Shown here: positions 875 to 47,582 of the stretch, piece by piece | Numbering within the stretch: the first letter of the stretch is position 1 | How the letters are laid out: every line of letters begins with the position of its first letter | IMG/VR virus record: IMGVR_UViG_3300025012_000028 | Location: 62,001-126,000 of that record | Reading direction: 5' to 3' (one strand) | DNA: 64,000 nucleotides | The notes under the pieces: model-generated | Seen by the model: only the letters and a program-made list of their open reading frames with translations | The model's database searches: none | What the model was told of the DNA's origin: nothing | Made by a program: the position numbers and the translations under genes

Positions 875-911
875 TTGACTTTAATTTAAAATGGTGGTAA
901 TATTATTTATA
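875..911. promoter_or_regulatory. Sigma70 promoter (+) fused to T4 late promoter (-)
   Basis: TTGACT(875-880)-17 bp-TAATAT(898-903) with TG extension, directly followed by TATTTATA(904-911). Confidence 0.85.
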
Positions 912-924
912 CCAACAAGGAGGA

Positions 925-1140
925 GTGATTATGAAACGAGTTAAAGGACATACTGCATCATATACTCGCACTGGTGCCAACGATTCGTATCATATGGTAC
1001 GGTGTTCTTGTGGATGGCAACCCTCTCATTCGCGCAACACCAAAGAGGGAATTGTGGCAGCGTTCGATAACCACAAAGCCATCATAATTTCCGAAATGGA
1101 AAATATAACTGTGTTAGCAGTTTTTCAAAAATATTCTTAA
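925..1140 (+). CDS. Small early protein with CSC motif
   Basis: AGGAGG RBS; first gene after promoter; likely ATG at 931. Confidence 0.65.
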   Translation: MIMKRVKGHTASYTRTGANDSYHMVRCSCGWQPSHSRNTKEGIVAAFDNHKAIIISEMENITVLAVFQKYS

Positions 1141-1150
1141 GGAGGAAATT

Positions 1151-1318
1151 ATGAAAGAATCCATCTTCAAAGTCGGTGATGCTGTCAAATATTGTCCCAA
1201 AGATTCGATGTTGGTGTGGTATGGAACGGTGGTTTCCGTGGGTAAAAAATATATGAAAATAAAGTATAGTGATGAAACCATTGAAAAAGTTGCCATCAAT
1301 TTAGTAAATTTCGATTGA
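1151..1318 (+). CDS. Small SH3/KOW-like hypothetical protein (55 aa)
   Basis: GGAGG RBS; MKESIFKVGDAVKY...; hand translated. Confidence 0.65.
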   Translation: MKESIFKVGDAVKYCPKDSMLVWYGTVVSVGKKYMKIKYSDETIEKVAINLVNFD

Positions 1319-1342
1319 CTTTATTTTAAATCCTGATATAAT
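1315..1342 (+). promoter_or_regulatory. Sigma70 early promoter
   Basis: TTGACT-16 bp-TATAAT with TG extension. Confidence 0.75.
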
Positions 1343-1356
1343 CTTTCCATAAACCA

Positions 1357-1566
1357 ATGAGGGAGGAAGTTATGGAAGAGAAAATGGTCGAGGTTGAAAT
1401 GTCGTGTGGCTGTTTTTTTCAAGTTCCCGAATCCATTTCCGAGGATATGGGGGAAGTTGAAGGTTATCTTCTCGATGAAAAATATATCAACGTTCAACAA
1501 ATGGACGTATCGCGCTTCGATGCGGTCTGCTCCAAATGTCATAGAACCATAATGAAGGATATTTAA
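1357..1566 (+). CDS. Small Zn-binding hypothetical protein
   Basis: CGC and CSKC motifs; GGAGG RBS before MEEK. Confidence 0.6.
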   Translation: MREEVMEEKMVEVEMSCGCFFQVPESISEDMGEVEGYLLDEKYINVQQMDVSRFDAVCSKCHRTIMKDI

Positions 1567-1791
1567 ATGGAACTGGTTAAAGTGGTTGTTCACACCATCT
1601 TTGAACATGATGGTTTGACCTTCAGTGTAAGTGTGACTGCGGTTCAGAAACACAAAGAAATCATCGGGGTCTATGTTGATCGTGAAGGGAATCAGAATGA
1701 TCTGTACGCTAAATCAATCTATGGTAAACAAGTAATCGAAACGTTGGGGGCTTATACTAAAGAACATGGAATTTTAAGTAAGGAGAGATAA
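1567..1791 (+). CDS. Hypothetical protein
   Basis: AAGGA RBS; abuts neighbours. Confidence 0.6.
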   Translation: MELVKVVVHTIFEHDGLTFSVSVTAVQKHKEIIGVYVDREGNQNDLYAKSIYGKQVIETLGAYTKEHGILSKER

Positions 1792-2226
1792 ATGGAAAAT
1801 CTTGGGTGTAAAGTTAAACTAATACATTCTCGTTATGGGTTTCTTATGATTAGGAATGTCACAGAAATTCATTTCAACCATCATCACGTCAAAGAGCGGT
1901 TCCTGAAAAAGATCAGTCTTGCAATCGAATCTGATATCCACGCGACAGGCGGAACGTATGATATGGATGAAGTAATGGAATTCGAAACTGAATTGGAAAT
2001 CGAGAAAGCAGAGAAACCCGAAGAGTATTATACAGACGAAACCTTTACTAATTTGGTGGATGATGTTAAACCCACAATGGCTGTTCAATTTGAGAAACAT
2101 TATAATGTTAACCATCTGCTGTCATATATGATTGGAAACCAATCTAAATTTGATTGTGATAGTAATTATCTATATATAGAGTTCTCCGATGGTTCAATAT
2201 TCAGACGGCATTTAAAGGAGATATGA
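1792..2226 (+). CDS. Hypothetical protein
   Basis: AAGGAG RBS; operonic spacing. Confidence 0.65.
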   Translation: MENLGCKVKLIHSRYGFLMIRNVTEIHFNHHHVKERFLKKISLAIESDIHATGGTYDMDEVMEFETELEIEKAEKPEEYYTDETFTNLVDDVKPTMAVQFEKHYNVNHLLSYMIGNQSKFDCDSNYLYIEFSDGSIFRRHLKEI

Positions 2227-2636
2227 ATGAGTTTAGATAGAAGTTCTACCAAATGGAGCAAGATATTGTTGGGAATGTCGCAAACCAGTTCTCAATTGTA
2301 TTGATTTGATTCCAATATGTTCTGCCGAGAATGTCACGACAAAATGATTAAGAAAAGTCAAGAAGCTTTATCGGATTATTGGGAAGGTAAAGGAGATATA
2401 ACTTCAACGATTGTAAACAAATTGTCGCTGTGGATAGGGCAACCGGTGATCAGTATGTCATAGGCTCCAAAAAGATTATAGATGGGTATGGGGATGTTAA
2501 GACTGAGTTCATGAACTACACCTTCGAACTCTATGATTTAAGGATTGATTATTTTCTGAAAAAACCTTGTTTCAGAGTCGTAAGATGTAAAGAGACAATT
2601 GGCAACCAAGAAACTATGGATCTTATTTTCGAATAA
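2223..2636 (+). pseudogene. Frameshifted Zn-finger gene (three apparent single-base deletions) or sequence error
   Basis: AAGGAG RBS; CWEC and CREC halves lie in successive frames and join ORF 2430..2636 if one base is restored near 2235, 2306 and 2390. Confidence 0.55.
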
Positions 2637-2650
2637 AAAAGGAGTGAGTT

Positions 2651-3025
2651 ATGGAACAGAAAATGCCGAAGCTTGATAGGGATGGGTTTGCTTATTGGTT
2701 TATTCTTGCGGCTGTATCTAGGAAAGCCAAAAAAACATCTCCTGATGCACCTTATCCTAGCACAAAAGCCGTCATTGGGTGGGAAGACCTATCGTTTGAT
2801 AATTGTAACATTGAATTTAAAATTAATGGTGTCGATGTTGATTTCCTCGACATGATGGAAAGAATTGAGGAAAGTCATGATCATGCAATTAAAAGAGTTG
2901 CGGAAGATTTAGTTAAAGATAAACTCAAACAGATCGATGATGAATTTGAGGACATCAAAGATATGACTCTTCGGGCAATCAGAGAGAAGTTTGAAAATAA
3001 AGAAGAAAGTGATATACATGATTAA
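2651..3025 (+). CDS. Hypothetical protein
   Basis: AGGAG RBS; 124 aa. Confidence 0.65.
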   Translation: MEQKMPKLDRDGFAYWFILAAVSRKAKKTSPDAPYPSTKAVIGWEDLSFDNCNIEFKINGVDVDFLDMMERIEESHDHAIKRVAEDLVKDKLKQIDDEFEDIKDMTLRAIREKFENKEESDIHD

Positions 3026-3233
3026 ATTCATTTCTCTTGTGTTAAATATTATCATGGGAAGTATGGTGGTGGTTTTAGTCTCTATTCTCCTGATTAAACT
3101 TTATTTTTCTTTCATGTCTTTCATTTGTTTTAATTTTGGTCATAAGTGGAAACATGTTCAGGAGTATAAGGGTCTGTTTGTTTACTGTTCTCGGTGTGGT
3201 GAAGAGGGTCTTGATTTGGGTGAGACGAAATAA
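3018..3233 (+). CDS. Small membrane protein with C-x3-GHKW...CSRCG motif (DUF1660-like)
   Basis: Hydrophobic N-terminus plus Cys/His motif. Confidence 0.55.
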   Translation: MIKFISLVLNIIMGSMVVVLVSILLIKLYFSFMSFICFNFGHKWKHVQEYKGLFVYCSRCGEEGLDLGETK

Positions 3234-3267
3234 AAAACCCCACTAAATTTCTCTAGTGGGGTTTTTT
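3232..3267. terminator. Bidirectional intrinsic terminator
   Basis: AAAAAACCCCACTA...TAGTGGGGTTTTTT between convergent genes. Confidence 0.85.
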
Positions 3268-3284: not shown

Positions 3285-4895
3285 TTAAAAGAAGTAAGTA
3301 TCGTTGATGAAGCTGGAACCGGTGAAGTCACAGAGAACTTTTCTGTAATACTTCTCTGCGCCCCAAATGCTACCCATGATGGCGTCTCTCGACTGGAAAC
3401 CGATTACGTTGGCAAAGGTGTTAGGATCGGTTACTTTGATCATCTGAAGCGGGATGTATGGGCAGTACATGATACCAGAGTCGGTATTCGCGCTTCCTTT
3501 GTAGCCCACGATGAAGTAATCACTCCAAGAGAAGGTATCGAGATAGACACTAAATCTTCCATCCAGAGTACCAACTTTAGCAACACCAAACTGAGGCTCG
3601 ACATTACCGGGAACCTGAGAGTACATAAAGTTACTCAGAGTCTCAAGAGCGGTTACGACATTCAGAGAAGCCAGAATGAAGTTAGCGGGACCACGGCGAG
3701 TTGAGAGAGCAACCCTGTTTGCTTCGTTCACGATACGGGTGTACAGTGAGCGGAATTTCTCAAGTTCCCAACGACCATCAGCGGTCTGTGCAGTCTGACC
3801 AGTAAGATCAGAAGGTTTGCCCATGATCTGACCCGGAGTTCCGTAGAACCAAGAACCAGCGTTGGTTGCTACACCGTGGATGGTATCAACGATATCCCTA
3901 TCCAGTTCAGCAGAGATTTCGTACTCAAGAATGTTAATCAGTTCTGCTTCAGCATTCAGGCCGAACTGTGCTTTAAGATCCTGTGCCAGTTCCATTGAGT
4001 ATTCTGCTTTGTACTTACGAGTTTCAGCGGTGACACTGAATTTCTCAACAGAAACTTTCATAGACTTCATTGCGGAACGCTGCATATATTCGGCAGATGC
4101 AGTTGTCTGATAAGGAGCGTAAGCAGTTCCGAACAGCAGGTTGTAACCAGCTTCGTTGTTGAACAGACCACGGATGTTGGTATCCGTTCCAAGTTCTACA
4201 CCAGCGCCACCGAAGGAAACGACTGCACCAGTAGCGAGTGCGGTTTTAGCAGCAATCGAATCTTTACCGGCTTTAAGCTGAATCAGCATTTTGGTTACGT
4301 TCTGACCAGCATCATACTGTGCGAGAACCACGTTACCCCAATCGGCAGCAGCGCCAGAAGCAGCACCATCAGCATCAATGGTAAAGTTGTAAGTGTTGGT
4401 CGCATCGGTGATTGCAACGGCAGCAGCAGGAATCTGACCACTCACAACAACACCGATGGACTGGAAGGACTGATCAGGAAGTTGGGTGCGTGGATTCAGT
4501 TTGTTGGTGCTCAGATTACCGGGATAATCAGCGGTGTTGTAATTCTGAAGGTTGTTCTTAGCAGCGCCCTTAACACCAGTTTCGTACCCATTGCGGATTG
4601 CAAACACAAACCCGTTAGGAGAATTCATCGGCTGAACACCAACGAGGTCATTAGAAACAAGGTTGGGGAAAATCCTACGAACAGCAGGAACCAGAATCGG
4701 GGTATACTGAGTGAAGTCGTTCAGGGAAGTCGAACCATCTTCCATCAGGTAATTTTGCTGATTCTCAAGCAGACGTGCCAGCGGCTCTCTCATGTCATGG
4801 CGGATAGGTTTGATTTTACCTGCGACATTAATTTCAGGATTTTTATCTGCATCCAGAATCGGTTTCCACTCTTCGACTAAAAGTTTTTCGGACAT
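3285..4895 (-). CDS. gp23: Major capsid protein (gp23-like)
   Basis: LLENQ, DLVGVQPMNSPNG, AETRKYKAEYSMELAQDLKA, EISAELDRDI, YCPYIPL motifs. Confidence 0.97.
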   Translation of the reverse strand: MSEKLLVEEWKPILDADKNPEINVAGKIKPIRHDMREPLARLLENQQNYLMEDGSTSLNDFTQYTPILVPAVRRIFPNLVSNDLVGVQPMNSPNGFVFAIRNGYETGVKGAAKNNLQNYNTADYPGNLSTNKLNPRTQLPDQSFQSIGVVVSGQIPAAAVAITDATNTYNFTIDADGAASGAAADWGNVVLAQYDAGQNVTKMLIQLKAGKDSIAAKTALATGAVVSFGGAGVELGTDTNIRGLFNNEAGYNLLFGTAYAPYQTTASAEYMQRSAMKSMKVSVEKFSVTAETRKYKAEYSMELAQDLKAQFGLNAEAELINILEYEISAELDRDIVDTIHGVATNAGSWFYGTPGQIMGKPSDLTGQTAQTADGRWELEKFRSLYTRIVNEANRVALSTRRGPANFILASLNVVTALETLSNFMYSQVPGNVEPQFGVAKVGTLDGRFSVYLDTFSWSDYFIVGYKGSANTDSGIMYCPYIPLQMIKVTDPNTFANVIGFQSRDAIMGSIWGAEKYYRKVLCDFTGSSFINDTYFF

Positions 4896-4936
4896 TGTAT
4901 ACTTCTCCTTATTAAGTTTTGATGATTAGTTTCTTT

Positions 4937-4944
4937 TATTTATA
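4937..4944 (-). promoter_or_regulatory. T4-type late promoter
   Basis: TATAAATA upstream of gp23. Confidence 0.85.
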
Positions 4945-4959
4945 ATTCTCAAAAAGTTT

Positions 4960-5643
4960 TTACCACTTGAATTGTTTAACCTTGTCTTGTGTCTCAGCAA
5001 TCGGAGGAGTTTCTTTCTCTTCAATGATCACAATCTTCTCTTCTTTTTTGCTGAACGGTTTCTTCTCTTCAGTCAGAACAGTGGTGGAGAAAGCAGCAAC
5101 TTTCCTTTCGAACAGTTCATCAAACGGAAGCTTCTTGGCATACTCAACCAGTTTAGATTTCTGCATGTCAGTATCAAGTTTAGAACAAGCTTCAGTAACC
5201 AGAGCAGCTTTTTCACGCATCTTGATTTCTTTCTTTGCTTCAACGAGTTGGTTGGTAACTTTGTTCAGTTCAGCTTTAGCTTCAACCAGTGCTTCTTCAT
5301 CCGTGACTTTCTTTTCGTCCAGTTGAATATTAAAATCTTCAACGATCTGATTGAAAGCTTTGAGTACACGTTCAGCAGTTTTTACTTTTACAGACTCTTC
5401 GATTGTCTTAGCATTTTCTTTGGTGAATTCTTCAACAAAGAGGTTGATATAATCGTCAAGTTTGTTGGTAAGGGATTCTTGGAACTGTTCAGTATCGATT
5501 TTGTTCTTAGCTTCCAGTTCTTCTTCTTTTACCTTAACGGCTTCGTTAATAGCATTTTCAAAAAGAACCGCCATCTGAAGTTTTACATCTTCAGTAAGAA
5601 CATCGCTCTGAATGGATTCAAAAAGTTTATCGATGTCGTTCAT
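4960..5643 (-). CDS. gp22: Prohead core scaffold protein (gp22-like)
   Basis: Coiled-coil acidic protein between gp21 and gp23; AAGGAG RBS before ATG 5643; late promoters at 5673-5680 and 5706-5713. Confidence 0.85.
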   Translation of the reverse strand: MNDIDKLFESIQSDVLTEDVKLQMAVLFENAINEAVKVKEEELEAKNKIDTEQFQESLTNKLDDYINLFVEEFTKENAKTIEESVKVKTAERVLKAFNQIVEDFNIQLDEKKVTDEEALVEAKAELNKVTNQLVEAKKEIKMREKAALVTEACSKLDTDMQKSKLVEYAKKLPFDELFERKVAAFSTTVLTEEKKPFSKKEEKIVIIEEKETPPIAETQDKVKQFKW

Positions 5644-5719
5644 GTTTAATATCTCTCCTTTGTACTTTGTTTTATTTATAAAATTGAAAAACTTTTTTCT
5701 AATTCTATTTATAAAAGTG

Positions 5720-6406
5720 TTAAATGTGTTTTGTCTTAATTTTGTTGATGGTTTCATTGAACAGTTTCAGGAAAGCGCCTTGACGATCCTCTTTTGAGAA
5801 TTGGTGTTCTAAAACTACCTTATCAACTTCAGCAACAATGATGTCGCGTTCCCTTTCTGTGAGCAGACCATTTTCAAAAACCCACTCTTTATTTTCACAG
5901 ATATTATCCAACAGACAGGAAGGACCGGAATTGTCATGAACCAGATCATTTGTTTTCCAAAACCAATCACCCTGAACAATCGAGTTCTTGACTGTGCCGG
6001 TTCCCCTAGTGGATGTTCCGACCTTAACACCCTCATCCATCAGAGACTTGATCACTTTACCAAGAGGAGTATCCAGAACTAATGAACGACCATATGCAAT
6101 ATTACCATCCATCTTAAGTTCTTTGATAAGGTGACTGACTCTCTCATAAGTAATATCTACATTCTGAGGATGTCCACATTCACCAAGTAATCTGTTCTGA
6201 GGAATTTCTTTCAGGTTCAATCTTTGTACATTCTTTTCTACTACAACTCTAGGATAGGTACGACCATTCCCATTTTTAATTTCACTGTCGGCGTGAGGAC
6301 CATTGAGCCAATATTTTTTGATTGGTTTACCATCATTGGTACTTTCGGTGATGATTTTGTTTTCCACACTCTGAAAATCAATTTCTTCTATCAGAAGTTC
6401 TGCCAT
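5720..6406 (-). CDS. gp21: Prohead protease (gp21-like)
   Basis: NGNGRTYP, LGECGHP, VSH, DTPLG, GTSTRGTG motifs. Confidence 0.95.
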   Translation of the reverse strand: MAELLIEEIDFQSVENKIITESTNDGKPIKKYWLNGPHADSEIKNGNGRTYPRVVVEKNVQRLNLKEIPQNRLLGECGHPQNVDITYERVSHLIKELKMDGNIAYGRSLVLDTPLGKVIKSLMDEGVKVGTSTRGTGTVKNSIVQGDWFWKTNDLVHDNSGPSCLLDNICENKEWVFENGLLTERERDIIVAEVDKVVLEHQFSKEDRQGAFLKLFNETINKIKTKHI

Positions 6407-6436
6407 ATGTTATTCTCCATTAATAAGAATTTCTTT

Positions 6437-6497
6437 TATTTATATTCTGAAATTATTTATATTTTGGGTTGACTTAATTCTGAAATGGTGGTAATAT
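6437..6497. promoter_or_regulatory. Two late promoters (-) back-to-back with a sigma70 promoter (+)
   Basis: TATTTATA 6437-6444 and 6454-6461; TTGACT(6469)-17 bp-TAATAT(6492). Confidence 0.85.
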
Positions 6498-6532
6498 TAT
6501 TTTGTAAACCAAATCCACTCTAGGAGGAAGTT

Positions 6533-6691
6533 ATGGCAAAGAAACTTGTTTATTGGAAACAACTTGATAATGGTAAATTTGTGATCGTGGATAAAAATGG
6601 TAGACATCTAACCACCGAGCAGGGTTTTAAAAATACTGTTATTGAACTGGCTAAAGTAAATCATCGTTGGGAACTTAAAGGAGAACTTTGA
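6533..6691 (+). CDS. Small early hypothetical protein (52 aa)
   Basis: AGGAGG RBS; MAKKLVYWKQ...; hand translated. Confidence 0.6.
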   Translation: MAKKLVYWKQLDNGKFVIVDKNGRHLTTEQGFKNTVIELAKVNHRWELKGEL

Positions 6692-6692
6692 T

Positions 6693-7199
6693 ATGGAACT
6701 TTTAGAACATTATCCTTTTTGGGATTTGGTGGCACACACTCTCAAACCTGTAACCAAAACTCCTAAATTGCGCCATTATGGACATGCTTTATCTTTAAGG
6801 TGTAATACCAAGCAACAATTCACCAAATCCCTAAATCTCTTAAATAAATCTGGGGTATTTGAATGTGACACAATCAAAGACACATTTACAATTTACATAT
6901 CACAGAAAGCGTTTTCTCAAAGAAAAATTTTCAAGTTGCCGAAGTCGCTGGCGATGTTGGAACCATTACTTGAAACTATGGGTTACAGGTGGTCTAACCA
7001 TTACATCAACCCAAGCACTCCTAATGATTGTTGGGCAGTAATCAATACTTCATCAAACCATGCGGGACAGGTTGGAATGGATGAATATACTGCAATCGAT
7101 TGTGTAATACGTATGGCGATTACCAGATTGAATTCAAAACAGAAACAGACTGAAGCTTTGAAGACAACTCTGACAGAAGTTTTAGAAGCATTGAAATAA
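6693..7199 (+). CDS. Hypothetical protein
   Basis: AAGGAG RBS; 168 aa. Confidence 0.65.
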   Translation: MELLEHYPFWDLVAHTLKPVTKTPKLRHYGHALSLRCNTKQQFTKSLNLLNKSGVFECDTIKDTFTIYISQKAFSQRKIFKLPKSLAMLEPLLETMGYRWSNHYINPSTPNDCWAVINTSSNHAGQVGMDEYTAIDCVIRMAITRLNSKQKQTEALKTTLTEVLEALK

Positions 7200-7209
7200 G
7201 GAGAACCTT

Positions 7210-7380
7210 ATGAAATTTAAAATCCGTGGTGACTGGCAACCAGATTTTGTGGAGGTTGATCTTTTGGTTTACCTCGATGTCGCAAACTCGTTGGGCATAC
7301 CTATGAGAAAAGGCTCTCCTGAAAATTTTCAAAAGGCATGTGTGCTCGGATTGGTTGAATATGAAGATAAAGATTTTTGA
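7210..7380 (+). CDS. Small hypothetical protein (56 aa)
   Basis: AAGGAG RBS; hand translated. Confidence 0.55.
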   Translation: MKFKIRGDWQPDFVEVDLLVYLDVANSLGIPMRKGSPENFQKACVLGLVEYEDKDF

Positions 7381-7387
7381 AAAATCC

Positions 7388-7416
7388 TTGACTTTTAAAA
7401 TGAAGTCTGGTACTAT
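7388..7416 (+). promoter_or_regulatory. Sigma70 early promoter
   Basis: TTGACT-17 bp-TACTAT with TG extension. Confidence 0.75.
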
Positions 7417-7450
7417 TCATTTAGATTTTAAACCACACTAGGAGGAAGTT

Positions 7451-7702
7451 ATGATCGAAATCACCATTAACACCAAACAGCAATCTATACAGGTTCAATC
7501 TGCAATCGATGTCGCCACAATAGCACTAACGGATTATAATAAGTTTTCCGGCAAGGAAGAGGGAATTATCGAAACTGTTATGGGTTGGGCAGAGAAAAAT
7601 TTGGAAATGGCTAAAGCCGAACATCTGGACGTTTTCGAACGAGAGAAATATATCAACAAGGCAATTGCTTACGCAAACGTTCTGGAAATCTTAATTCAAT
7701 AG
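7451..7702 (+). CDS. Hypothetical protein
   Basis: AGGAGG RBS. Confidence 0.65.
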   Translation: MIEITINTKQQSIQVQSAIDVATIALTDYNKFSGKEEGIIETVMGWAEKNLEMAKAEHLDVFEREKYINKAIAYANVLEILIQ

Positions 7703-7713
7703 GAGGTCAAGCA

Positions 7714-8274
7714 ATGAAACTCATTGATATGATGAAACGAGTTGACCGTTCCAAAGGAAATTCAGTTGATGGTGACATTGATGATTTCTGTCGGGAACTC
7801 GGGATTGAAAATTATTTCGGGTGGGATCAGGCTTTTTCTGAGCGGGTTCAAGGATACTACCTGATTAAATGGTTCTGCACCGATTCGTGGGTGGGTGCGG
7901 TTGTTTACATCATGGATGATAAACCTGTCGCAATTTCTTACCAATCTGGAAGAAAGAGTGGTCGTGAATTTGAATTTGTCAGCAAAGAAGCTGTGGAGAA
8001 GGTGAGAGCATTTATCCTGTCTCTGATTGAACAGGAAGATCGTTATTCCCTTCTGAATCTGGAAGAAGAACTTGATGAATTCTACACTGTGGATTATACA
8101 TCACAACTTCTGGTGAATAATGGGTTTGTGGATGGAAAACCCTGTGTGGTAGAAACAAATGTTCTAAGAGGTTGGGAATATACAACTTGCAAAGAGGTTG
8201 GAGTGAAGTTTGAAGATGGAAGTACCAAGACAGTATCAATCAAAGACTTCAAAATTCCCTGTCACTTTATCTAA
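7714..8274 (+). CDS. Hypothetical phage protein (KWFCTDSWVG motif)
   Basis: AGGAGG RBS; 186 aa. Confidence 0.7.
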   Translation: MKLIDMMKRVDRSKGNSVDGDIDDFCRELGIENYFGWDQAFSERVQGYYLIKWFCTDSWVGAVVYIMDDKPVAISYQSGRKSGREFEFVSKEAVEKVRAFILSLIEQEDRYSLLNLEEELDEFYTVDYTSQLLVNNGFVDGKPCVVETNVLRGWEYTTCKEVGVKFEDGSTKTVSIKDFKIPCHFI

Positions 8275-8278
8275 TATC

Positions 8279-8315
8279 AAAAACCCTCTAGAGTTTATAA
8301 ACTCTAGAGGGTTTT
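8279..8315. terminator. Bidirectional intrinsic terminator
   Basis: AAAACCCTCTAGAGTTT/AAACTCTAGAGGGTTTT. Confidence 0.85.
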
Positions 8316-8477
8316 GTTTAAGCAGTTTTAAATTGTCGCATGACCAGCTTTTCTTTTTCCTTAACAATCTCTCCAATCCTTGTTTTAAGTTTGTCGGCCA
8401 CAACCAGACCAATATTTTGTTTAAAATCTACCGGTGTTTTTTCTGATGCATTGTTAATTGCTTTCCTGATAAGTTCC

Positions 8478-10124
8478 TTAGACATTAGTTTCTTCTCCTT
8501 TAAGATCTGTTGGTTTTTCTGAATCTATTGGTGTTTCTTTTTTGCTGAACGATCCCCCTCCCATTCCCATCGTTGGGGATGAAGAACCTCTACGAGACAC
8601 ATTATATTCGTCTCCAAAATCTGAATTCTCTACGTCCGAGTTAAATTCATCGTCCGATTTGGCAGCATTAGCAATTGCGTTTTCCTGATCAATGCGTTTC
8701 ATCTCTTCGTCGGTCAATCTTAAAATATTCTCTTGAACAAATACTTTTGAAAGGTATCCATTCCCAACCAACTGGTCGGCGTTGTTTGCTGTTGCAATTC
8801 TCATATCGAGAATTTGGTTGTTTTTAATTTCCGAATACTCATTGGAGTTTGCATAGGTGAATTTAATCTTTTCCTGAATCTGCATCCAATCTTCAAGGGA
8901 CATAACTTTTTTAGCAAGCAAATCTTTCTTGAGCAGATCAACAAAGAGATTATTGAAACGCCGTCTGAGTTTCAAAATGAATTTGAAGAATTTCAATTCA
9001 TCCTTTTCAATGTCTACCTGATTAGTTACGGTCATGCGCTGATCAGGAGCGCGTCTAGAGATAGGAACCTTGAGTGACCTATACACCTTATTAACCATAT
9101 AGTCAACGTCTTCAAAAGAGGTAAATCCGGGCGCTGTACCTGCTACATTTTCTACCCTTGGGCCAGAACCACTAGCATCCACCGGAAACCAAAAATCTTC
9201 AAGAACACTAATACTCCTGTTTTTGTTTTCTACTTGTCCAGTATCCAGATTATAAATCTTCTTCTGGCGATATTTATTGATCACCGATTGAAGATATTCT
9301 TCGGCTTTATACTTATTCAATCCCTTGGTCGGAATGTAGAAAGCTCTCTTCTCAGCAGATTTGGTAATCCTCGCAATTACCAAACTATCTTCCACCAAAC
9401 CCAATTGGTTGATAACCTTCATAGCAGAATTTAGATAAGAGATATGAAACTTTTTATCTATACTGGATATTCCAGAATTGATGTGGGTTATCTGTTCATC
9501 TGTATAAAACTTGGTATCATTCTTTATCGATTCACCATAGAAGTATCTCTTCTCTCCGGTGGGAGTAGTAGCTATGTTCATTCCGAAAGGTGTGAGTAAT
9601 ACAAGTTTCTTTATACCATCTCTGATCTTCGCATTATCAAAAACCGATTCAACATTCAACTGTCCATCTACATACCACTGTCTGAATAGATCATCGCCAC
9701 GTTCATTGAAATCCAACATATACAGAATCTTATTCCACGACTCTTGCATTTTTTCTTTGACTGGATCTGGAATCTCGATGTCAGATAGATTCAACTTAAC
9801 TGGTTCTTCGACTTCATCATAAACAATAGCTTCGTTGGCAACTTCATTCACAGCATATTCGACTTCTGGAAGATAAGATGCTTGACGCCATCTCATGATA
9901 CATTCCGTCTTGTTGGTACTTAAAGCTTGTTCTTGGCCGTAAGAGTTGAGAGAGTAGGAGTTGAATGGGTTGTACGAAATGTATGGTGATTCAACTTCCT
10001 TTTCCGTTGATGATTGGGAGCTATCGGGGATCACCATAATCTCTTGTTCAGCCCTTGAATAGAAGGGGAACTTTAGTGTCTCGGTTAAGAAATCCACAGA
10101 CCTTTGTTTAAGTTTATCAAACAT
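8478..10124 (-). CDS. gp20: Portal protein (gp20-like)
   Basis: FRQWYVDG, EDSLVIARI...EKRAFYI, LEDFWFP, LKVPISR motifs. Confidence 0.96.
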   Translation of the reverse strand: MFDKLKQRSVDFLTETLKFPFYSRAEQEIMVIPDSSQSSTEKEVESPYISYNPFNSYSLNSYGQEQALSTNKTECIMRWRQASYLPEVEYAVNEVANEAIVYDEVEEPVKLNLSDIEIPDPVKEKMQESWNKILYMLDFNERGDDLFRQWYVDGQLNVESVFDNAKIRDGIKKLVLLTPFGMNIATTPTGEKRYFYGESIKNDTKFYTDEQITHINSGISSIDKKFHISYLNSAMKVINQLGLVEDSLVIARITKSAEKRAFYIPTKGLNKYKAEEYLQSVINKYRQKKIYNLDTGQVENKNRSISVLEDFWFPVDASGSGPRVENVAGTAPGFTSFEDVDYMVNKVYRSLKVPISRRAPDQRMTVTNQVDIEKDELKFFKFILKLRRRFNNLFVDLLKKDLLAKKVMSLEDWMQIQEKIKFTYANSNEYSEIKNNQILDMRIATANNADQLVGNGYLSKVFVQENILRLTDEEMKRIDQENAIANAAKSDDEFNSDVENSDFGDEYNVSRRGSSSPTMGMGGGSFSKKETPIDSEKPTDLKGEETNV

Positions 10125-10154
10125 TTCATTTCCTTTAGGAATTAGGTTTTATTT

Positions 10155-10201
10155 TATTTATAAAAGAAAATGGTTGACTTTTAGATTCAGACTGATATAA
10201 T
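10155..10201. promoter_or_regulatory. Late promoter (-) back-to-back with sigma70 promoter (+)
   Basis: TATTTATA 10155-10162; TTGACT(10174)-16 bp-TATAAT(10196). Confidence 0.85.
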
Positions 10202-10233
10202 CAATTTATAAATTAAACTTACAGGAGGAAGCT

Positions 10234-10551
10234 ATGGTATCCAAAACTGAATTTTACAATAATTACATCAGCAGAATTGGTTTCAAATTAAATGGTGTTT
10301 ATGTTCCGAAGGGTACTATTGCGGATCTTATTCACATCTCCTGCGACAAACATAAAAAATGTAAATGCCCTCATATTTACCGTTTGCAGGGTCTTGTTAA
10401 GAAAGATATACACTCGGTGGGTAAACCATTTAGTGTGGATATCATCAACCAAGACGATGCTACAAATTATGGGTTTGATGCTTGTTATTCACTTGCAGAT
10501 TATCCAACCAGCTTTTCTTATTTTCATAATCCTACGGAGGATAGAATATGA
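10234..10551 (+). CDS. Hypothetical protein
   Basis: AGGAGG RBS. Confidence 0.6.
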   Translation: MVSKTEFYNNYISRIGFKLNGVYVPKGTIADLIHISCDKHKKCKCPHIYRLQGLVKKDIHSVGKPFSVDIINQDDATNYGFDACYSLADYPTSFSYFHNPTEDRI

Positions 10552-10757
10552 TTATGAATAGAGAAACATTCGAATCGATTCTTTCTTGTAATCACCACAT
10601 CCAAATCGATTGTCCGGTATGTGAATACACCTATGCTGGTGAGGATGATGCACAAACCACTTGCCATGTTTGTGGGAAACCTCTGGGTGAGGGGAAGATT
10701 ACACTACTCGAATTTGTGGATATGATCTTAACTAAAATTGGAGGAGAAAGGAAATGA
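10548..10757 (+). CDS. Small Zn-ribbon protein
   Basis: CPVC...CHVC. Confidence 0.6.
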   Translation: MIMNRETFESILSCNHHIQIDCPVCEYTYAGEDDAQTTCHVCGKPLGEGKITLLEFVDMILTKIGGERK

Positions 10758-10960
10758 CACATAAAGAAAACTGTCCGTGGAAAGAGGGTTTTAGTTTGCT
10801 GGTGACTGCAAATAATCCCGGTGGTGGGGATGAATATATCTCTATCACAGACGAAAGCATTTATTACAGATCCAATTACCACACAATCAACGATGATGAT
10901 CAATATATCAGCTTTGATTTTTGCCCTAAATGCGGGGCTTCTCTAACTCAGGAGGATTAA
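10754..10960 (+). CDS. Small Zn-binding protein
   Basis: C-terminal FCPKCG. Confidence 0.6.
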   Translation: MTHKENCPWKEGFSLLVTANNPGGGDEYISITDESIYYRSNYHTINDDDQYISFDFCPKCGASLTQED

Positions 10961-10967
10961 AAAGAAT

Positions 10968-11375
10968 ATGGATAATGAAGATTTTACAGTTGAGGAACTA
11001 GAGATAGCTTTAAAAATAGTTTCTTCAAAAGGAAATAGTTGTCTCCACTCTATATGTGATGGGCATTATAGACTTAAAAAATCTTTAGAATTTGATGTAG
11101 TGGTTGCGAAAGCTAAAGATTGCAAAATCCAGAAGAAAACAATCTGGGTTTTGGATCACTACGAAAATTCGTATGAAGGTACACAAGGTATCATTTGTTG
11201 GTGGTCTGAAAAGCCCACATATCAACAACTGTTTGATAAGCTTTTGTTCTTGAAAGCTTTAGATGAAGATCAGAAGGATATTTATAAAACGGCTGTTGTG
11301 ATCAGTCTTCTTGAAGGTATAGAGGTTAGATGCCACAACACAGATTATACTCTATGGGTAATGGAGGAAGGTTAA
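10968..11375 (+). CDS. Hypothetical protein
   Basis: AGGAGG RBS; converges on gp4. Confidence 0.6.
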   Translation: MDNEDFTVEELEIALKIVSSKGNSCLHSICDGHYRLKKSLEFDVVVAKAKDCKIQKKTIWVLDHYENSYEGTQGIICWWSEKPTYQQLFDKLLFLKALDEDQKDIYKTAVVISLLEGIEVRCHNTDYTLWVMEEG

Positions 11376-11848: not shown

Positions 11849-11918
11849 ACCCTCTCAGTTTCTATCCATTGTCCTATAATAAAAGGCAGTAGATGTCTAT
11901 GTCCTAACGGACAAGATT

Positions 11919-11947
11919 ATTTTAACTCCGAAATCCGTAATTGTCAA
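11919..11947 (-). promoter_or_regulatory. Sigma70-type promoter upstream of gp4
   Basis: TTGACA-17 bp-TAAAAT on minus strand. Confidence 0.55.
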
Positions 11948-12456: not shown

Positions 12457-12465
12457 AATAAACCT

Positions 12466-45886: not shown

Positions 45887-45943
45887 TATTTATGATTATT
45901 TATAAAATAATTTCTTGACTTCTGGTGTGGGTTCTGGTAAGAT
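45887..45943. promoter_or_regulatory. Late promoter (-) back-to-back with sigma70 promoter (+)
   Basis: TATTTATA 45897-45904; TTGACT(45915)-17 bp-TAAGAT(45938). Confidence 0.85.
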
Positions 45944-45969
45944 AAATTTATAAAACATTTGGGGGAATT

Positions 45970-46290
45970 ATGAGACAAGGAAAAGTTGGGGATAGATTTT
46001 ATGAAGGTGAAGTGGTGTTAACTATAACCGGAAAAGAAACTACTCCGTTTCCTAAACTGACGCTCGATTCTAACCGCAAGACAATCAATACACTCAAAAG
46101 AGTTGATAAATGGTTGTTGGAAAATACTCAGAAAGAAGCACACTCACGAAACGATGAATTTAATAGCACAACATTTGATAGAATGAACTCCACCAAACTT
46201 AGTATGTCGGATAAAGACACTCTCGAATATTATCTGTTTGGTGAAGATCAACCAGTAGTTCTGAAACCTTTTCTCAAATCACTTTTTTAA
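45970..46290 (+). CDS. Early hypothetical protein
   Basis: GGGGG RBS; first gene of island. Confidence 0.65.
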   Translation: MRQGKVGDRFYEGEVVLTITGKETTPFPKLTLDSNRKTINTLKRVDKWLLENTQKEAHSRNDEFNSTTFDRMNSTKLSMSDKDTLEYYLFGEDQPVVLKPFLKSLF

Positions 46291-46314
46291 TAAAAATATA
46301 ATATAGGAGGAAAT

Positions 46315-46449
46315 ATGTTTCGAATTGTTTGTTTCAACGGAACCACCGACGAAATTTGGGGAAATTCAATTTCCGAAGCAGTGGAACGGTTTGTTAAAAA
46401 ACACAAACTTCATGAAGTTGATATTGAATCTATAGTGAGGGTAATTTAA
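46315..46449 (+). CDS. Small hypothetical protein (44 aa)
   Basis: AGGAGG RBS; hand translated. Confidence 0.5.
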   Translation: MFRIVCFNGTTDEIWGNSISEAVERFVKKHKLHEVDIESIVRVI

Positions 46450-46450
46450 T

Positions 46451-46690
46451 ATGACCACCAACCAAATGATTAACGAAATTCGAAACACGGTAGGATATAT
46501 GGAATCTGAAAATAAAAAAGAATTTATTAAAGGTGCCAAGATGGGATATGATATATGTAGTAATGCGGCATGGAAAATGATTGGTGACACACAAAAACAT
46601 GCTGAGTCGCTTGCAGAACTGTTGTCAAACCGTGAAGAAGATCTTCAGACTCTAGCCAACATTATCCAGAAATATACTTCTAATGATTGA
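46451..46690 (+). CDS. Hypothetical protein
   Basis: Operonic. Confidence 0.55.
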   Translation: MTTNQMINEIRNTVGYMESENKKEFIKGAKMGYDICSNAAWKMIGDTQKHAESLAELLSNREEDLQTLANIIQKYTSND

Positions 46691-46699
46691 GGAGAATAT

Positions 46700-46879
46700 A
46701 TGAACATACCAAAACATCGACACGAAGATGTTATTGCTGTTCTGTGGCAACTTTTAACAGAAGTGGAAGGATCAGTTAAGGAAACTGATGCAGTTGGAAA
46801 AGCGATGGTGGTTAGCGGTTATAACCTCATGAACGATCTGGGTGTAACGGATGCTAGACCTCGTTGGGAATCAAAATAA
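46700..46879 (+). CDS. Small hypothetical protein (59 aa)
   Basis: GAGGAG RBS; hand translated. Confidence 0.55.
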   Translation: MNIPKHRHEDVIAVLWQLLTEVEGSVKETDAVGKAMVVSGYNLMNDLGVTDARPRWESK

Positions 46880-46899
46880 CTACTGGTTAAGGAGAATTT

Positions 46900-47181
46900 A
46901 TGAACGAAAATTATAATGAGTTTTATCAGAGAAAGAAACTACCCAAAGGTCTGTGTCGTAAGATGTGGACAGACTATCCTTTTGTGAATTATCTCAACGG
47001 TGCTCTAGTTACAGTTCTCAATTACGATGGGAATAAGTATTGTGATGTGCAGCTTCCTGATGGTACTTTTGCAGATGTGAAACGGGGATACCTACATCGC
47101 ACCATCAAGGATCTGAATGTTTGGCGCAAAAGAATGTTGGGTGACTATTACAGGCGAACAAAACAGAGGATGTATCTATGA
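46900..47181 (+). CDS. Hypothetical protein (WTDYPF...YDGNKYC...KRGY)
   Basis: AAGGAG RBS. Confidence 0.65.
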   Translation: MNENYNEFYQRKKLPKGLCRKMWTDYPFVNYLNGALVTVLNYDGNKYCDVQLPDGTFADVKRGYLHRTIKDLNVWRKRMLGDYYRRTKQRMYL

Positions 47182-47546
47182 ATACTTTTCAGGGTGATAA
47201 TTATCGATTTGATATAACTGCTACCGGTGACGATCTACTTAGAATAGCTATACAGGTAGCTTTCATGAAAGAAAATGAGGTTGTTGATATTAAAGAAGTA
47301 AACAACACTTTAGTTCTTTATTGGTCAACGGAAAAAGCAAATCCTTTCATGACTCTTGATTTTGAAGCAACATTCAAAGTCGTTAAAGAGTGGTTGGATA
47401 AACAAACACAATATCCCAATGAACCCAATCACGATGGAGACAACAAAAAGGGATTTAGGGTTTATAATGAAGCGTGGGGTGAAGTGAAAAACGATTGGAG
47501 AGCATTTTGTGGTATTGAACCAGTGCGGATGATGTATGGTAAATAA
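47178..47546 (+). CDS. Hypothetical phage protein (DGDNKKGFRV...MYGK)
   Basis: GAGGA RBS; overlap with previous gene. Confidence 0.65.
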   Translation: MNTFQGDNYRFDITATGDDLLRIAIQVAFMKENEVVDIKEVNNTLVLYWSTEKANPFMTLDFEATFKVVKEWLDKQTQYPNEPNHDGDNKKGFRVYNEAWGEVKNDWRAFCGIEPVRMMYGK

Positions 47547-47549
47547 AAG

Positions 47550-47582
47550 AAAACCCTCTAAGATTTCTCTTAGAGGGGTTTT
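47550..47582. terminator. Bidirectional intrinsic terminator
   Basis: AAAACCCTCTAAGA...TCTTAGAGGGGTTTT. Confidence 0.85.

What the first reader, a model, noticed from the sequence alone, without database searches (positions are those of the whole stretch)
875..47582. Late structural cluster split by ten plus-strand early islands inserted back-to-back with late promoters
Seen: islands begin at 875, 6469, 10174, 13000, 14071, 18068, 20122, 26579, 32110 and 45915. Each has a TTGAC(T/A)-16/17 bp sigma70 promoter within about 70 bp of a minus-strand late box. Five end in clear bidirectional terminators, one at a hairpin, and the rest converge on the next late gene. In T4 the gp13-gp24 block is contiguous. 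Inference: late-promoter upstream regions act as repeated safe landing sites for self-contained early modules, reminiscent of the PeSL cassettes of T4-type phages but inside the morphogenesis core.
Basis: partly seen in the sequence, partly recalled or inferred. Interest (0 to 1): 0.65.

Follow-up and report, generated by a model that had tools for sequence, protein, structure and literature searches.

The report
Early-gene islets splitting T4-like late cluster
In this uncultured T4-like groundwater phage, the normally unbroken block of virion genes is cut in ten places by small opposite-strand gene cassettes, each with its own host-type promoter; related phages show that these cassettes come, go and swap content at the same late-promoter junctions.

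Summary
All ten plus-strand islands start at the stated coordinates with a near-consensus sigma70 promoter (TTGAC[T/A]-17-TAnnnT, often with an extended -10). Nine lie within 70 bp of an exact minus-strand TATAAATA late box; the tenth has a one-mismatch box. The genome holds 12 such exact divergent pairs, against 0.13 in shuffles. Six islands end in bidirectional terminators and four converge on a late gene.

Relatives keep the same core order (gp13-14-15-16-17-18-tubes-portal-21-22-23). Some have no islands at all. Others have islets at the same junctions with different ORFs. Only 10 of 87 related loci have any opposite-strand run, and none has more than 3.

In island-free relatives the late boxes are already present upstream of gp18, the tube genes, gp17 and gp21. 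Junctions without a late box almost never carry islets.

Some island genes of relatives map to the small-ORF and replication regions of this genome, including an NAD-ligase. One gene family sits at different junctions in two phages.

So these are turnover-prone, self-contained, probably early transcription units lodged at late-operon boundaries. They work like PeSL or moron cassettes, but the ten island heads lack the defining PeSL stem-loop. Early timing and the insertion mechanism are untested. I rate it a new variant of a known kind, of moderate interest.

The parts
875..3267 (+). Island 1 (junction after gp23). Promoter 875-903, interleaved with minus-strand late box 904-911. Internal second promoter 1315-1342. 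At least 8 small ORFs (931-1140, 1151-1318, 1357-1566, 1567-1791, 1792-2226, 2430-2636, 2651-3025, 2991-3233). Bidirectional terminator 3232-3267.
   Evidence: The cassette P1315 + ORF 1357-1566 is conserved in relative L173 (55.6% aa identity over 54 residues; promoter -35 and spacer identical over 19 nt); the other ORFs differ.
6469..8315 (+). Island 2 (upstream of gp21). Promoter 6469-6497; minus-strand late boxes at 6437 and 6454. Internal promoter 7388-7416. Five ORFs (6533-6691, 6693-7199, 7210-7380, 7451-7702, 7714-8274). Perfect 36-bp palindromic terminator 8280-8315.
   Evidence: ORF 7714-8274 matches phrog_4518 (E 2e-49). It has patchy homologs in Pseudomonas, Bacillus, Aeromonas and Vibrio phages and a 39%-identical homolog at a different junction in L172.
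10174..11375 (+). Island 3 (upstream of portal gp20). Promoter 10174-10201; late box at 10155. Four ORFs (10234-10551, 10548-10757, 10754-10960, 10968-11375). The last ORF overlaps the stop of the converging gene 11372-11848 by 4 nt; no terminator.
   Evidence: Relative L002 (portal 74%) has a 5-ORF opposite-strand island at this junction with no shared ORF.
13000..13476 (+). Island 4 (upstream of tail-tube paralog B). Promoter 13000-13028; late box 12991-12998, 1 nt away. ORFs 13060-13284 and 13297-13440. Bidirectional terminator 13441-13476.
   Evidence: The 47-aa ORF is conserved at the same junction in L169 (59%) and L170 (54%), but the 74-aa ORF is unique to this genome.
14071..14573 (+). 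Island 5 (upstream of tail-tube paralog C). Promoter 14071-14099; late box at 14047. ORFs 14122-14298 and 14324-14542 (DUF7446). Bidirectional terminator 14542-14573.
   Evidence: Relatives L169, L170, L172, L092 and L104 each have one unrelated opposite-strand ORF here (72, 91, 53, 86 and 111 aa).
14542..15199 (-). Eleventh module, on the same strand as the late genes: stem-loop 15170-15199 directly after the sheath gene, then sigma70 promoter at 15147, then ORF 14585-15025 (or from the ATG at 14965), then terminator 14542-14573. This is the one true stem-loop-plus-promoter (PeSL-type) cassette.
   Evidence: hairpin dG -20.9, about 20 nt upstream of the -35. It is conserved in L169 (68% over 75 aa), which also has a same-strand sigma70 promoter at L169:1196.
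18068..18415 (+). Island 6 (upstream of sheath gp18). Promoter 18068-18096; late box at 17999. ORFs 18126-18257 and 18269-18415. Converges on the terminase large subunit gene (stop at 18434) without a strong terminator.
   Evidence: The 79-81% relative has 102-aa and 69-aa opposite-strand ORFs here; L096 and L097 have three each; L005, L007 and L172 have none.
20122..20872 (+). Island 7 (upstream of terminase large subunit gp17). Promoter 20122-20150; late box 20112-20119. ORFs 20183-20317, 20318-20470, 20437-20646, 20627-20872. Converges on gene 20935-21864.
   Evidence: A 63-bp perfect direct repeat with a 57-bp offset (20616-20678 / 20673-20735) lies inside the last ORF.
26579..26911 (+). 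Island 8 (upstream of the 801-aa late gene). Promoter 26579-26607, interleaved with late box 26608-26615. One ORF, 26639-26911, whose end overlaps the stop region of the small-terminase-like gene 26889-27443.
32110..32397 (+). Island 9 (between gp14 and gp15 homologs). Promoter 32110-32138; only a variant late box (CATAAATA) upstream of gp15. One ORF, 32181-32357. A 42-bp palindromic terminator at 32356-32397.
   Evidence: L095 and L100 have no insertion and no late box at this junction.
45915..47584 (+). Island 10. Promoter 45915-45943; late box at 45897. Six ORFs (45970-46290, about 46315-46446, 46451-46690, 46700-46879, 46900-47181, 47178-47546). Bidirectional terminator 47548-47584.
47600..48832 (+). 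Not part of island 10: a free-standing homing endonuclease (47630-48802, NUMOD3 / phrog_314) with its own plus-strand late box (47602) and terminator 48796-48832. It shares two leader segments (29 bp at 100%, 57 bp at 98%) with a second endonuclease gene at 52434-53504.
3285..35026 (-). T4-type late morphogenesis block in T4 order: gp13 34223-35026, endonuclease-like 33118-34221, gp14 32397-33128, gp15 31206-32075, small-terminase-like 26889-27443, gp24-like 22769-24124, gp17 18434-20083, gp18 15225-17948, three gp19-like tube paralogs (13482-14006, 12466-12972, 11977-12456), TnsA-like 11372-11848, gp20 8478-10124, gp21 5720-6406, gp22 4960-5757, gp23 3285-4895. Minus-strand TATAAATA boxes at 4937, 6437, 6454, 10155, 12991, 14047, 17999, 20112, 24153, 26608.
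   Evidence: A gp55 late-sigma homolog lies elsewhere in the genome.

Best explanation
The ten islands are autonomous transcription units of accessory genes, most likely expressed early. Each has a strong host sigma70-type promoter, a consensus ribosome-binding site, 1-8 tightly packed small ORFs (mostly ORFans), and either an intrinsic bidirectional terminator or a convergent end.

They occupy the boundaries between late operons of a T4-like morphogenesis cluster, head-to-head with the TATAAATA late promoter of the next late gene. Each late operon has its own gp55-type promoter, so a cassette lodged there does not break late expression. The bidirectional terminators insulate the two programmes from each other.

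The junctions act as small hyperplastic sites. Cassettes are gained, lost, replaced and moved between junctions and the genome's canonical small-ORF and replication regions, probably by recombination within the phage gene pool.

Shown: the anatomy, its non-randomness, variable occupancy and content in relatives, and late promoters already present in island-free relatives.

Inferred: early timing, the insulating role of the terminators, the recombination mechanism, and selection for the opposite orientation. The proposed reasons for that orientation are that the host-type promoter does not drive virion genes prematurely, and that late read-through becomes antisense to the early genes.
For: Anatomy and statistics:
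- All ten promoters sit at the stated bases; there are 12 exact divergent pairs against 0.13 expected.
- Six bidirectional terminators.
- A gp55 homolog is present.

Comparative:
- The core order is conserved, but L005, L007, L098, L174 and L176 have one-strand blocks with no islets.
- L002, the 79-81% relative (including L169), L170, L172, L173, L175, L006, L092, L104, L096 and L097 have islets at the same junctions.
- Only 10 of 87 related loci have any opposite-strand run, and the maximum is 3.
- None of the 33 island ORFs tested matched any of 163 related loci. In later island-versus-island and locus-versus-genome comparisons, three island ORFs of this genome found a homolog in a relative's island. 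ORF 13297-13440 is at the same junction (L169, L170). ORF 1357-1566 with promoter P1315 is at the same junction (L173). ORF 7714-8274 is at a different junction (L172).
- Island genes of L002 and L006 map to this genome's small-ORF arrays and replication block; one is an NAD-ligase.
- Late boxes are present at gp18, tubeC, tubeB, gp17 and gp21 junctions in island-free relatives, and islets are nearly absent at box-less junctions.
- On the portal tree, island-bearing and island-free lineages are interleaved within one clade supported at 98/99.
- No island ORF matches an endonuclease family.
Against: - No expression data exist: no RNA run holds this DNA, so 'early' rests on promoter type and on homology of relatives' island genes.
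- There is no sign of island polymorphism or excision in the population, though the evidence is contigs only, from one strain.
- Island GC (37.1%) is like that of the late genes (38.3%), so there is no compositional mark of recent import.
- Most relatives are short metagenomic contigs with 45-81% protein identity, so small-ORF homology could be missed and ORF calls are heuristic.
- At 875 and 26579 the late box is embedded in the early-promoter motif, and gp15 has no late box in L095 or L100. So at some junctions the late promoter may have arrived or evolved with the island rather than preceding it.
- Relatives also have same-strand insertions at these junctions.
Confidence: 0.72

Rival explanations
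1. The cassettes are bidirectional promoter modules. An early promoter and a late box travel together as one unit, so a cassette can split a late operon anywhere and re-supply the late promoter to the downstream gene. On this reading they do not land next to an existing late promoter.
For: At 875 and 26579 the same motif, TGGTAATATTATTTATA, contains both the sigma70 -10 and the opposite-strand late box. In both cases the late start codon is 38 nt from the box. At 6469 there is a decayed copy (TGGTAATATTATTTTGT). gp15 has no late box in L095 or L100, while this genome has island 9 plus a variant box there. Across the wider set of relatives, gp17 and gp21 rarely have an exact box (4% and 12%).
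Against: Within the close clade, island-free loci already carry late boxes upstream of gp18 (9 of 9), tubeC (6 of 6), tubeB (5 of 5), gp17 and gp21. At seven islands the box is separate from the promoter, at variable distances of 9-69 bp. Junctions without boxes (tubeA, hc158, gp22) are essentially never occupied, which a promoter-carrying cassette would not predict.
Confidence: 0.15
2. The islands are ancestral, functionally integrated parts of the morphogenesis programme (for example assembly chaperones or regulators on the opposite strand), and island-free relatives have lost them.
For: A few island ORFs are conserved at the same junction in 70-79% relatives: the 47-aa ORF of island 4, and the P1315 + ORF 1357 cassette. 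On the portal tree, island-bearing lineages form parts of one clade.
Against: Content at a given junction is mostly unrelated between relatives. Outgroups and 77 of 87 related loci have none. One gene family sits at different junctions in two phages. A DNA ligase occupies such an island in L006. The promoters are host sigma70-type, not late-type.
Confidence: 0.06
3. The insertions are footprints of homing endonuclease activity: cargo co-converted with free-standing endonuclease genes that were later lost.
For: The genome has many free-standing endonuclease genes, some inside the late cluster (33118-34221, 47630-48802, 52434-53504). L092 has an endonuclease gene on the opposite strand upstream of the portal. 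T4's only interruption of this block is segD.
Against: None of the roughly 35 island ORFs matches an endonuclease family. The endonuclease genes here use late boxes and a shared leader, not the island promoter motif.
Confidence: 0.05

Closest known systems
PeSL (promoter-early stem-loop) cassettes of T4-type phages (Arbiol et al. 2010, PMC2839356; Comeau et al. 2014, PMC4122927)
   Same: Near-consensus sigma70 early promoter plus Shine-Dalgarno plus ATG in front of small ORFans. Terminator stem-loops of the A3-4G3...C3T3-4 kind. Association with insertions, deletions and replacements between related phages. Promoter-bounded cassettes conserved as units (P1315 + ORF 1357 in L173). Internal repeated promoters in islands 1 and 2. 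One true stem-loop-plus-promoter cassette at 15147-15199.
   Different: PeSLs are described as preferentially in hyperplastic regions and 'usually not structural regions'. Here they sit at nearly every late-operon boundary of the morphogenesis core. They are on the opposite strand. The sequence upstream of the promoter is a divergent late promoter, not a stem-loop (0 of 10). Most islands have a single promoter, so the flanking direct repeats needed for mini-circle excision are lacking. Mini-circles were not tested.
Morons of lambdoid phages (an ORF flanked by its own promoter and terminator inside a late operon; as summarised in PMC1524935)
   Same: Self-contained promoter-ORF-terminator units lodged between late genes that are adjacent in relatives. 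Expression presumably independent of the surrounding late operon.
   Different: This is a lytic T4-like phage, not a temperate one. GC content is like the rest of the genome (37.1 vs 38.3%), so no sign of recent host origin. Many units are multi-gene, and they are oriented against the late genes.
Hyperplastic regions (HPRs) of T4-like genomes
   Same: Arrays of small, fast-turning-over ORFs behind early promoters between conserved core blocks. Genes are shared with this genome's own small-ORF regions.
   Different: HPRs are few and large, lying between core modules. Here there are ten micro-HPRs of 0.3-2.4 kb inside the gp13-gp23 module and on its flanks.
Free-standing homing endonuclease genes in T4 late regions (segD between genes 23 and 24)
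   Same: Opposite-strand interruption of the late cluster at an intergenic site. This genome also has such genes at 33118-34221, 47630-48802 and 52434-53504.
   Different: The islands encode no endonuclease and use sigma70-type promoters. The endonuclease genes here use late boxes.

Membership tests
PeSL cassette | Sigma70-like early promoter followed by a Shine-Dalgarno sequence and the start codon of a small ORF | tested here: met
   Ten of ten island heads, plus internal promoters at 1315 and 7388.
PeSL cassette | Stem-loop (terminator) located just upstream of the promoter, forming one composite motif | tested here: not met
   None of the ten island heads has a stable hairpin next to the -35 in the 70 nt upstream (best dG 0 to -9.6; the -9.6 hairpin at 18068 lies 8-52 nt upstream and spans the late-box region); the sequence upstream is a divergent late box. 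The feature is met only at 15147 (dG -20.9) and at 57456 outside the finding.
PeSL cassette | Located next to insertions, deletions or replacements between related phages | tested here: met
   Occupancy and content differ at the same junctions in relatives with 56-81% protein identity.
PeSL cassette | Recombination between flanking PeSLs yields mini-circles | not testable with these tools
   Needs inverse PCR on infected cells or virions. Contigs of four runs show no deletion joint at the islands; the single joint reported (11951 to 13279, 25-nt side) starts at the edge of the 87-bp repeat.
Moron | Own promoter and own terminator flanking the inserted gene(s) | tested here: met
   Promoter at ten of ten and intrinsic bidirectional terminator at six of ten. 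Four islands end by convergence.
Moron | Flanking late genes are adjacent in relatives | tested here: met
   L005, L007, L098, L172, L174 and L176 have gaps of 30-140 bp at the corresponding junctions.
Moron | [quoted passage not shown] | tested here: not met
   Islands 37.1% GC against late genes 38.3%.
T4-type late transcription unit (for the minus-strand neighbours) | TATAAATA box 20-50 nt upstream of the start codon, and a gp55-type late sigma factor encoded by the phage | tested here: met
   Boxes lie 19-51 nt upstream of gp23, gp21, gp20, tubeB, tubeC, gp18, gp17, gp24-like and the 801-aa gene. A gp55 homolog is at genome 13542-13862 (E 3e-7 within the genome). gp33 was not searched for; gp45 gave no hit.
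Homing-endonuclease insertion | An endonuclease gene (GIY-YIG, HNH, LAGLIDADG) within the inserted segment | tested here: not met
   No island ORF matches such a family in Pfam or PHROGs.

The most novel reading that the evidence does not exclude
The head-to-head or interleaved early/late promoter pairs may be a reusable temporal switch. Occupancy by host sigma70 polymerase would block the adjacent late promoter early in infection. After early shut-off, late transcripts that read through would become antisense to the island mRNAs. The unterminated islands (3, 6, 7, 8) would send early antisense RNA into the TnsA-like gene, both terminase genes and the 309-aa gene. At some junctions the composite motif TGGTAATATTATTTATA would itself be the mobile unit that lets cassettes split late operons. 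On this reading a lineage of T4-like phages has turned every late-operon boundary into a regulated slot for accessory genes.
Probability: 0.15. Interest if true: 0.7.

Novelty: new variant of a known kind. Interest (0 to 1): 0.5.

Why it matters
T4-like phages are the textbook case of a stable morphogenesis core with plasticity confined to a few hyperplastic regions. The PeSL literature states explicitly that such cassettes are usually not found in structural regions.

This lineage shows the core module can tolerate an accessory cassette at almost every late-operon boundary: eight inside gp13-gp23 and two on its flanks. That gives a natural series of fixed, comparable slots for measuring gain, loss and exchange of early ORFans.

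These slots are also likely places to look for host-takeover or anti-defence genes. The design rule they suggest (insert only upstream of an autonomous late promoter, in the opposite orientation, with a bidirectional terminator) could guide the engineering of T4-like phages.

Tried and rejected
- DNA-level searches of the sheath-to-gp15 region and of two late genes against 50,697 phage records found nothing. The MCP is only about 30-35% identical to cultured T4-likes, so no annotated close relative exists.
- tRNA scan: none found.
- Rfam at gathering threshold: no hits.
- The tool's loose sigma70 and terminator scans are not enriched over shuffles. Only the strict extended motif is.
- Sequencing runs: only DNA contigs of groundwater and sediment metagenomes, and no RNA. 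Laying the contigs of four runs on 10001-16000 showed the same strain with zero differences and no island indel. The single 'joint' (11951 to 13279, side 25) begins at the edge of the 87-bp repeat and is taken as a repeat or assembly artefact. This gives no information on mobility.
- Paralogy among island ORFs within the genome: none, apart from the endonuclease genes.
- Compositional evidence for foreign origin: none.
- The contigs of the 79-81% relative from sample ERZ1426697 have gene tables but no DNA, so their island ORFs could be compared only through L169.
- Structure prediction, complex prediction, the large representative protein search and the atlas were not used. The claim concerns architecture, and the ORFan status of the islands does not depend on them.
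- Considered and rejected: spurious ORFs in spacers. Against this are strong Shine-Dalgarno sequences, start-stop coupling, positive coding scores, and several family or relative matches.
- Considered and rejected: segment inversions. The promoters and terminators are cassette-specific, and relatives show presence/absence, not inversion.

Full report
**What the window is.** The window is bases 62001-126000 of a 214,553-bp metagenome contig. The contig ends overlap by 149 bp, so it is a complete, circularly permuted genome. It comes from groundwater. The minus strand carries a T4-type morphogenesis cluster in T4 order:
- gp13 34223-35026
- an endonuclease-like gene 33118-34221
- gp14 32397-33128
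- gp15 31206-32075
- a collagen-like fibre gene and two unknown genes
- a small-terminase-like gene 26889-27443
- an 801-aa gene
- a gp24-like second capsid gene 22769-24124
- two unknown genes
- gp17 18434-20083
- gp18 15225-17948
- three gp19-like tube paralogs
- a TnsA-like 158-aa gene 11372-11848
- portal gp20 8478-10124
- gp21, gp22 and gp23 (3285-6406)

The capsid protein is only about 30-35% identical to those of cultured T4-like phages, and no phage record matches at the DNA level. In T4 itself, genes 7 to 23 form one uninterrupted same-strand run. The only opposite-strand gene in the 13-24 block is the endonuclease segD, between 23 and 24.

**Check of the observation.** A coding-potential gene map shows the strand alternating exactly as described. 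Plus-strand runs of small ORFs begin after 875, 6469, 10174, 13000, 14071, 18068, 20122, 26579, 32110 and 45915. Each of these coordinates is the first base of TTGAC[T/A]. A TAnnnT -10 follows 17 nt later, usually preceded by TG, then a GGAGG-type ribosome-binding site and an ATG.

A minus-strand TATAAATA lies 9-69 bp upstream of the -35 at seven islands. At 875 and 26579 it directly abuts the -10, within the shared motif TGGTAATATTATTTATA. Island 9 has only CATAAATA.

The pattern is far beyond chance:
- The strict promoter pattern occurs 29 times against 5.8 +/- 2.9 expected.
- TATAAATA occurs 69 times against 26.8 +/- 5.2. Of these, 42 lie in the 9.6% of the genome that is intergenic, and 38 have a same-strand start codon within 120 nt.
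- Exact divergent pairs number 12 against 0.13 in shuffles.
- The tool's loose consensus scan is not enriched, so the signal is in the extended motif.

A homolog of the T4 late sigma factor gp55 is encoded elsewhere in the genome.

**Island ends.** Six islands end in symmetrical A-tract/GC-stem/T-tract hairpins that can terminate both strands: 3232-3267, 8280-8315 (a perfect 36-bp palindrome), 13441-13476, 14542-14573, 32356-32397 and 47548-47584. Islands 3 and 8 overlap the stop codon of the converging late gene. Islands 6 and 7 converge without a strong hairpin.

The sheath gene is followed by a stem-loop (15170-15199), a sigma70 promoter (15147), a 126-146-aa ORF and the terminator at 14542-14573.

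The plus-strand gene 47630-48802, right after island 10, is a free-standing homing endonuclease. It has its own plus-strand late box and two leader segments (29 bp and 57 bp) shared with a second endonuclease gene at 52434-53504. It is not part of the sigma70 island.

**What the islands encode.** There are about 35 ORFs of 43-186 aa, and almost all are ORFans. The exceptions are families of unknown function: phrog_4518 (7714-8274), DUF7446 (14324-14542), DUF1660 (2991-3233) and phrog_16252 (18269-18415). None is an endonuclease. They have no paralogs in the genome. Their GC content (37.1%) matches that of the late genes (38.3%). The phrog_4518 protein has a patchy distribution across Pseudomonas, Bacillus, Aeromonas and Vibrio phages.

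**Relatives.** Protein searches with the portal, a tube protein and the capsid protein found a clade of uncultured relatives. Scans of viral contigs with the terminase and sheath added more distant ones. Fetched contexts show the same core gene order throughout.

*Island-free relatives.* L005 and L176 (portal 63%), L007 (57%), L098 and L174 have the whole block on one strand, with 30-140-bp gaps.

*Relatives with islets at the same junctions.*
- The 79-81% relative has opposite-strand ORFs between gp17 and gp18 (102 + 69 aa), upstream of tube C (72 aa), upstream of tube B (45 aa) and upstream of gp21 (49 + 64 aa).
- L002 (74%) has five upstream of the portal.
- L170 and L173 (70-76%) have islets upstream of both tube genes, upstream of gp21, and after gp23.
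- L172 (60%) has one upstream of tube C and one upstream of the terminase region.
- L006, L092 and L104 (56-57%) have two or three each.

In these loci a TTGAC[A/T]-N17-TAnnnT on the islet strand sits 10-15 bp from a TATAAATA on the core strand. Across 87 related loci that span at least 6 kb of the core, only 10 have any opposite-strand run, and none has more than three. This genome has eight inside gp13-gp23.

**Content turnover.** None of the 33 island ORFs tested matched any of 163 related loci, whereas core genes matched up to 135. Later island-versus-island and locus-versus-genome comparisons found only these links:
- The 47-aa ORF of island 4 is conserved at the same junction in L169 and L170. 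The 74-aa ORF in front of it is unique to this genome.
- The internal cassette of island 1 (promoter 1315 + ORF 1357-1566) is conserved after gp23 in L173. The promoter -35 and spacer are identical over 19 nt, while the neighbouring ORFs differ.
- The phrog_4518 gene of island 2 sits in L172 in an islet near the terminase, that is, at a different junction.

Two island ORFs of L002 have homologs in this genome's small-ORF arrays, at genome 35987-36217 and 130009-130353. The second lies among TTGACTTTAATTTAAA promoters. The 628-aa NAD-dependent DNA ligase in an L006 island is the homolog of the ligase in this genome's replication block. So island content is not invariant, and at least part of it belongs to the early or DNA-metabolism gene pool.

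**Are the junctions pre-existing late-operon boundaries?** In the close clade, an exact TATAAATA lies within 200 nt upstream of:
- gp18 in 10 of 10 loci
- tube C in 12 of 12
- tube B in 10 of 11
- gp17 in 3 of 4
- gp21 in 4 of 5
- gp20 in 4 of 7

This includes all the island-free loci for gp18 and the tubes. It is essentially absent upstream of tube A (0 of 10), the TnsA-like gene (1 of 10) and gp22 (0 of 5). Divergent sigma70 promoters occur at the box-bearing junctions (tube C 6 of 12, tube B 6 of 11, gp20 2 of 7, gp21 2 of 5) and almost never at the box-less ones.

This genome's islands occupy exactly the box-bearing classes.

The caveats are:
- In the wider, more distant set, gp17 and gp21 rarely show an exact box.
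- gp15 has none in L095 or L100.
- At 875 and 26579 the late box is part of the early-promoter motif. At some junctions, therefore, the late promoter may have come or evolved with the island.

On a portal tree, island-bearing and island-free lineages are interleaved within one clade supported at 98/99, and the outgroups have none. This implies repeated gain and/or loss, but the polarity is unresolved.

**Mechanism.**

*Shown:* each island has the sequence anatomy of an autonomous unit, and each flanking late gene has its own late promoter.

*Inferred:*
- Host sigma70 polymerase transcribes the islands early.
- The bidirectional terminators stop early transcripts from running antisense into the upstream late gene, and stop late transcripts from running antisense through the island.
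- Opposite orientation is favoured because a same-strand sigma70 promoter would drive virion genes prematurely.
- Late read-through across an opposite-strand island would silence it.
- At the two interleaved pairs, binding at one promoter should exclude the other.

Exchange probably occurs by recombination within the phage gene pool, using the conserved promoter and terminator motifs. The classical PeSL mini-circle route needs two flanking direct repeats, which only islands 1 and 2 have (875/1315 and 6469/7388).

**Comparison with known systems.** PeSLs are defined as a stem-loop just upstream of a sigma70-like early promoter plus Shine-Dalgarno plus ATG. They lie mostly in hyperplastic regions and 'usually not structural regions', are associated with indels, and form mini-circles (PMC4122927; PMC2839356). 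The islands share the promoter, the ORFan cargo, the terminator type and the association with indels. They fail the composite stem-loop-promoter feature at all ten heads, and they sit in the structural core on the opposite strand.

They also fit the moron definition (own promoter and terminator between late genes; PMC1524935), except for composition and phage lifestyle. I therefore treat them as working like PeSL or moron cassettes, but do not file them as PeSLs. The one exception is the same-strand cassette at 14542-15199.

**What led nowhere.** No RNA run holds this DNA. Contigs from four runs show the same strain without island variants. Rfam and tRNA scans are empty. The best relatives' contigs from one sample have no DNA on file.

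**Verdict.** It is a new variant of known T4-type genome plasticity, with micro-hyperplastic slots at late-operon boundaries inside the morphogenesis core, and is of moderate interest.

Noticed in passing
window 11865-11951; 105033-105119 (beyond the window, genome 167033-167119); partial copy at genome 8343-8417: An 87-bp element, 100% identical in inverted orientation at two loci, with a 75-bp copy at 91% at a third. It contains a sigma70-like promoter (TTGACAATTACGGATTTCGGAGTTAAAAT) and a short hairpin. In the window it lies just upstream of the TnsA-like gene. Assemblies break at it. Its fold is not unusual (z -1.8).
   Followed up: partly
window 11372-11848 (-): The conserved gene between tube paralog A and the portal is called 'head closure' by PHROGs (phrog_218), but it matches Pfam Tn7_TnsA-like_N (E 5e-14) here and in relatives. 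It is preceded by a sigma70-like promoter, not a late box, both here and in L170.
   Followed up: partly
window 47600-47700 and 52329-52430; genes 47630-48802, 52434-53504, 33118-34221, 42531-43340: Two free-standing homing endonuclease genes of different families (a NUMOD3 / phrog_314 type and a CapR/HNH type) share two upstream segments (29 bp at 100%, 57 bp at 98%) that contain a plus-strand late box and a hairpin. The genome also holds three further full-length copies of the 47630-type endonuclease, a fragment inside 42531-43340, and a copy of the second type at about window 95700-96550. An endonuclease-like gene also sits between gp13 and gp14.
   Followed up: partly
window 11977-12456, 12466-12972, 13482-14006 (-): Three gp19-like tail-tube paralogs in a row, conserved across the clade. 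T4 has one.
   Followed up: no
window 22769-24124 (-): The gp24-like second capsid gene lies between the small-terminase-like gene and gp17, not after gp23 as in T4. The same position is seen in L005, L095 and L102.
   Followed up: no
window 20616-20735; 30633-30824; 42824-43018: Perfect or near-perfect direct repeats inside ORFs: 63 bp with a 57-bp offset in the last ORF of island 7, a 93-bp repeat in the collagen-like fibre gene, and a 57-bp repeat in 42531-43340.
   Followed up: no
related loci: Island-bearing relatives are AT-rich (29-37% GC: L006, L175, L173, L002, L104, L092 and this genome). Island-free close relatives are 38-50% GC (L176, L005, L174, L098, L007).
   Followed up: no
L175:2401-4203; protein P0030: In relatives, the prohead protease gene carries an intein (L175), and one portal homolog is a 945-aa fusion with HNH and intein domains (P0030).
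   Followed up: no
whole genome: Replication and recombination genes (gp44, gp46, gp47 homologs, ligase) are on the same strand as the virion genes, whereas the gp55 homolog is in a 29-kb plus-strand block. So strand does not equal temporal class genome-wide, unlike the rough rule in T4.
   Followed up: no
window 18051-18058 (+): A plus-strand TATAAATA lies 9 bp upstream of the -35 of the island 6 promoter. Island 6 could therefore also be read from a late promoter, or this could be chance.
   Followed up: no
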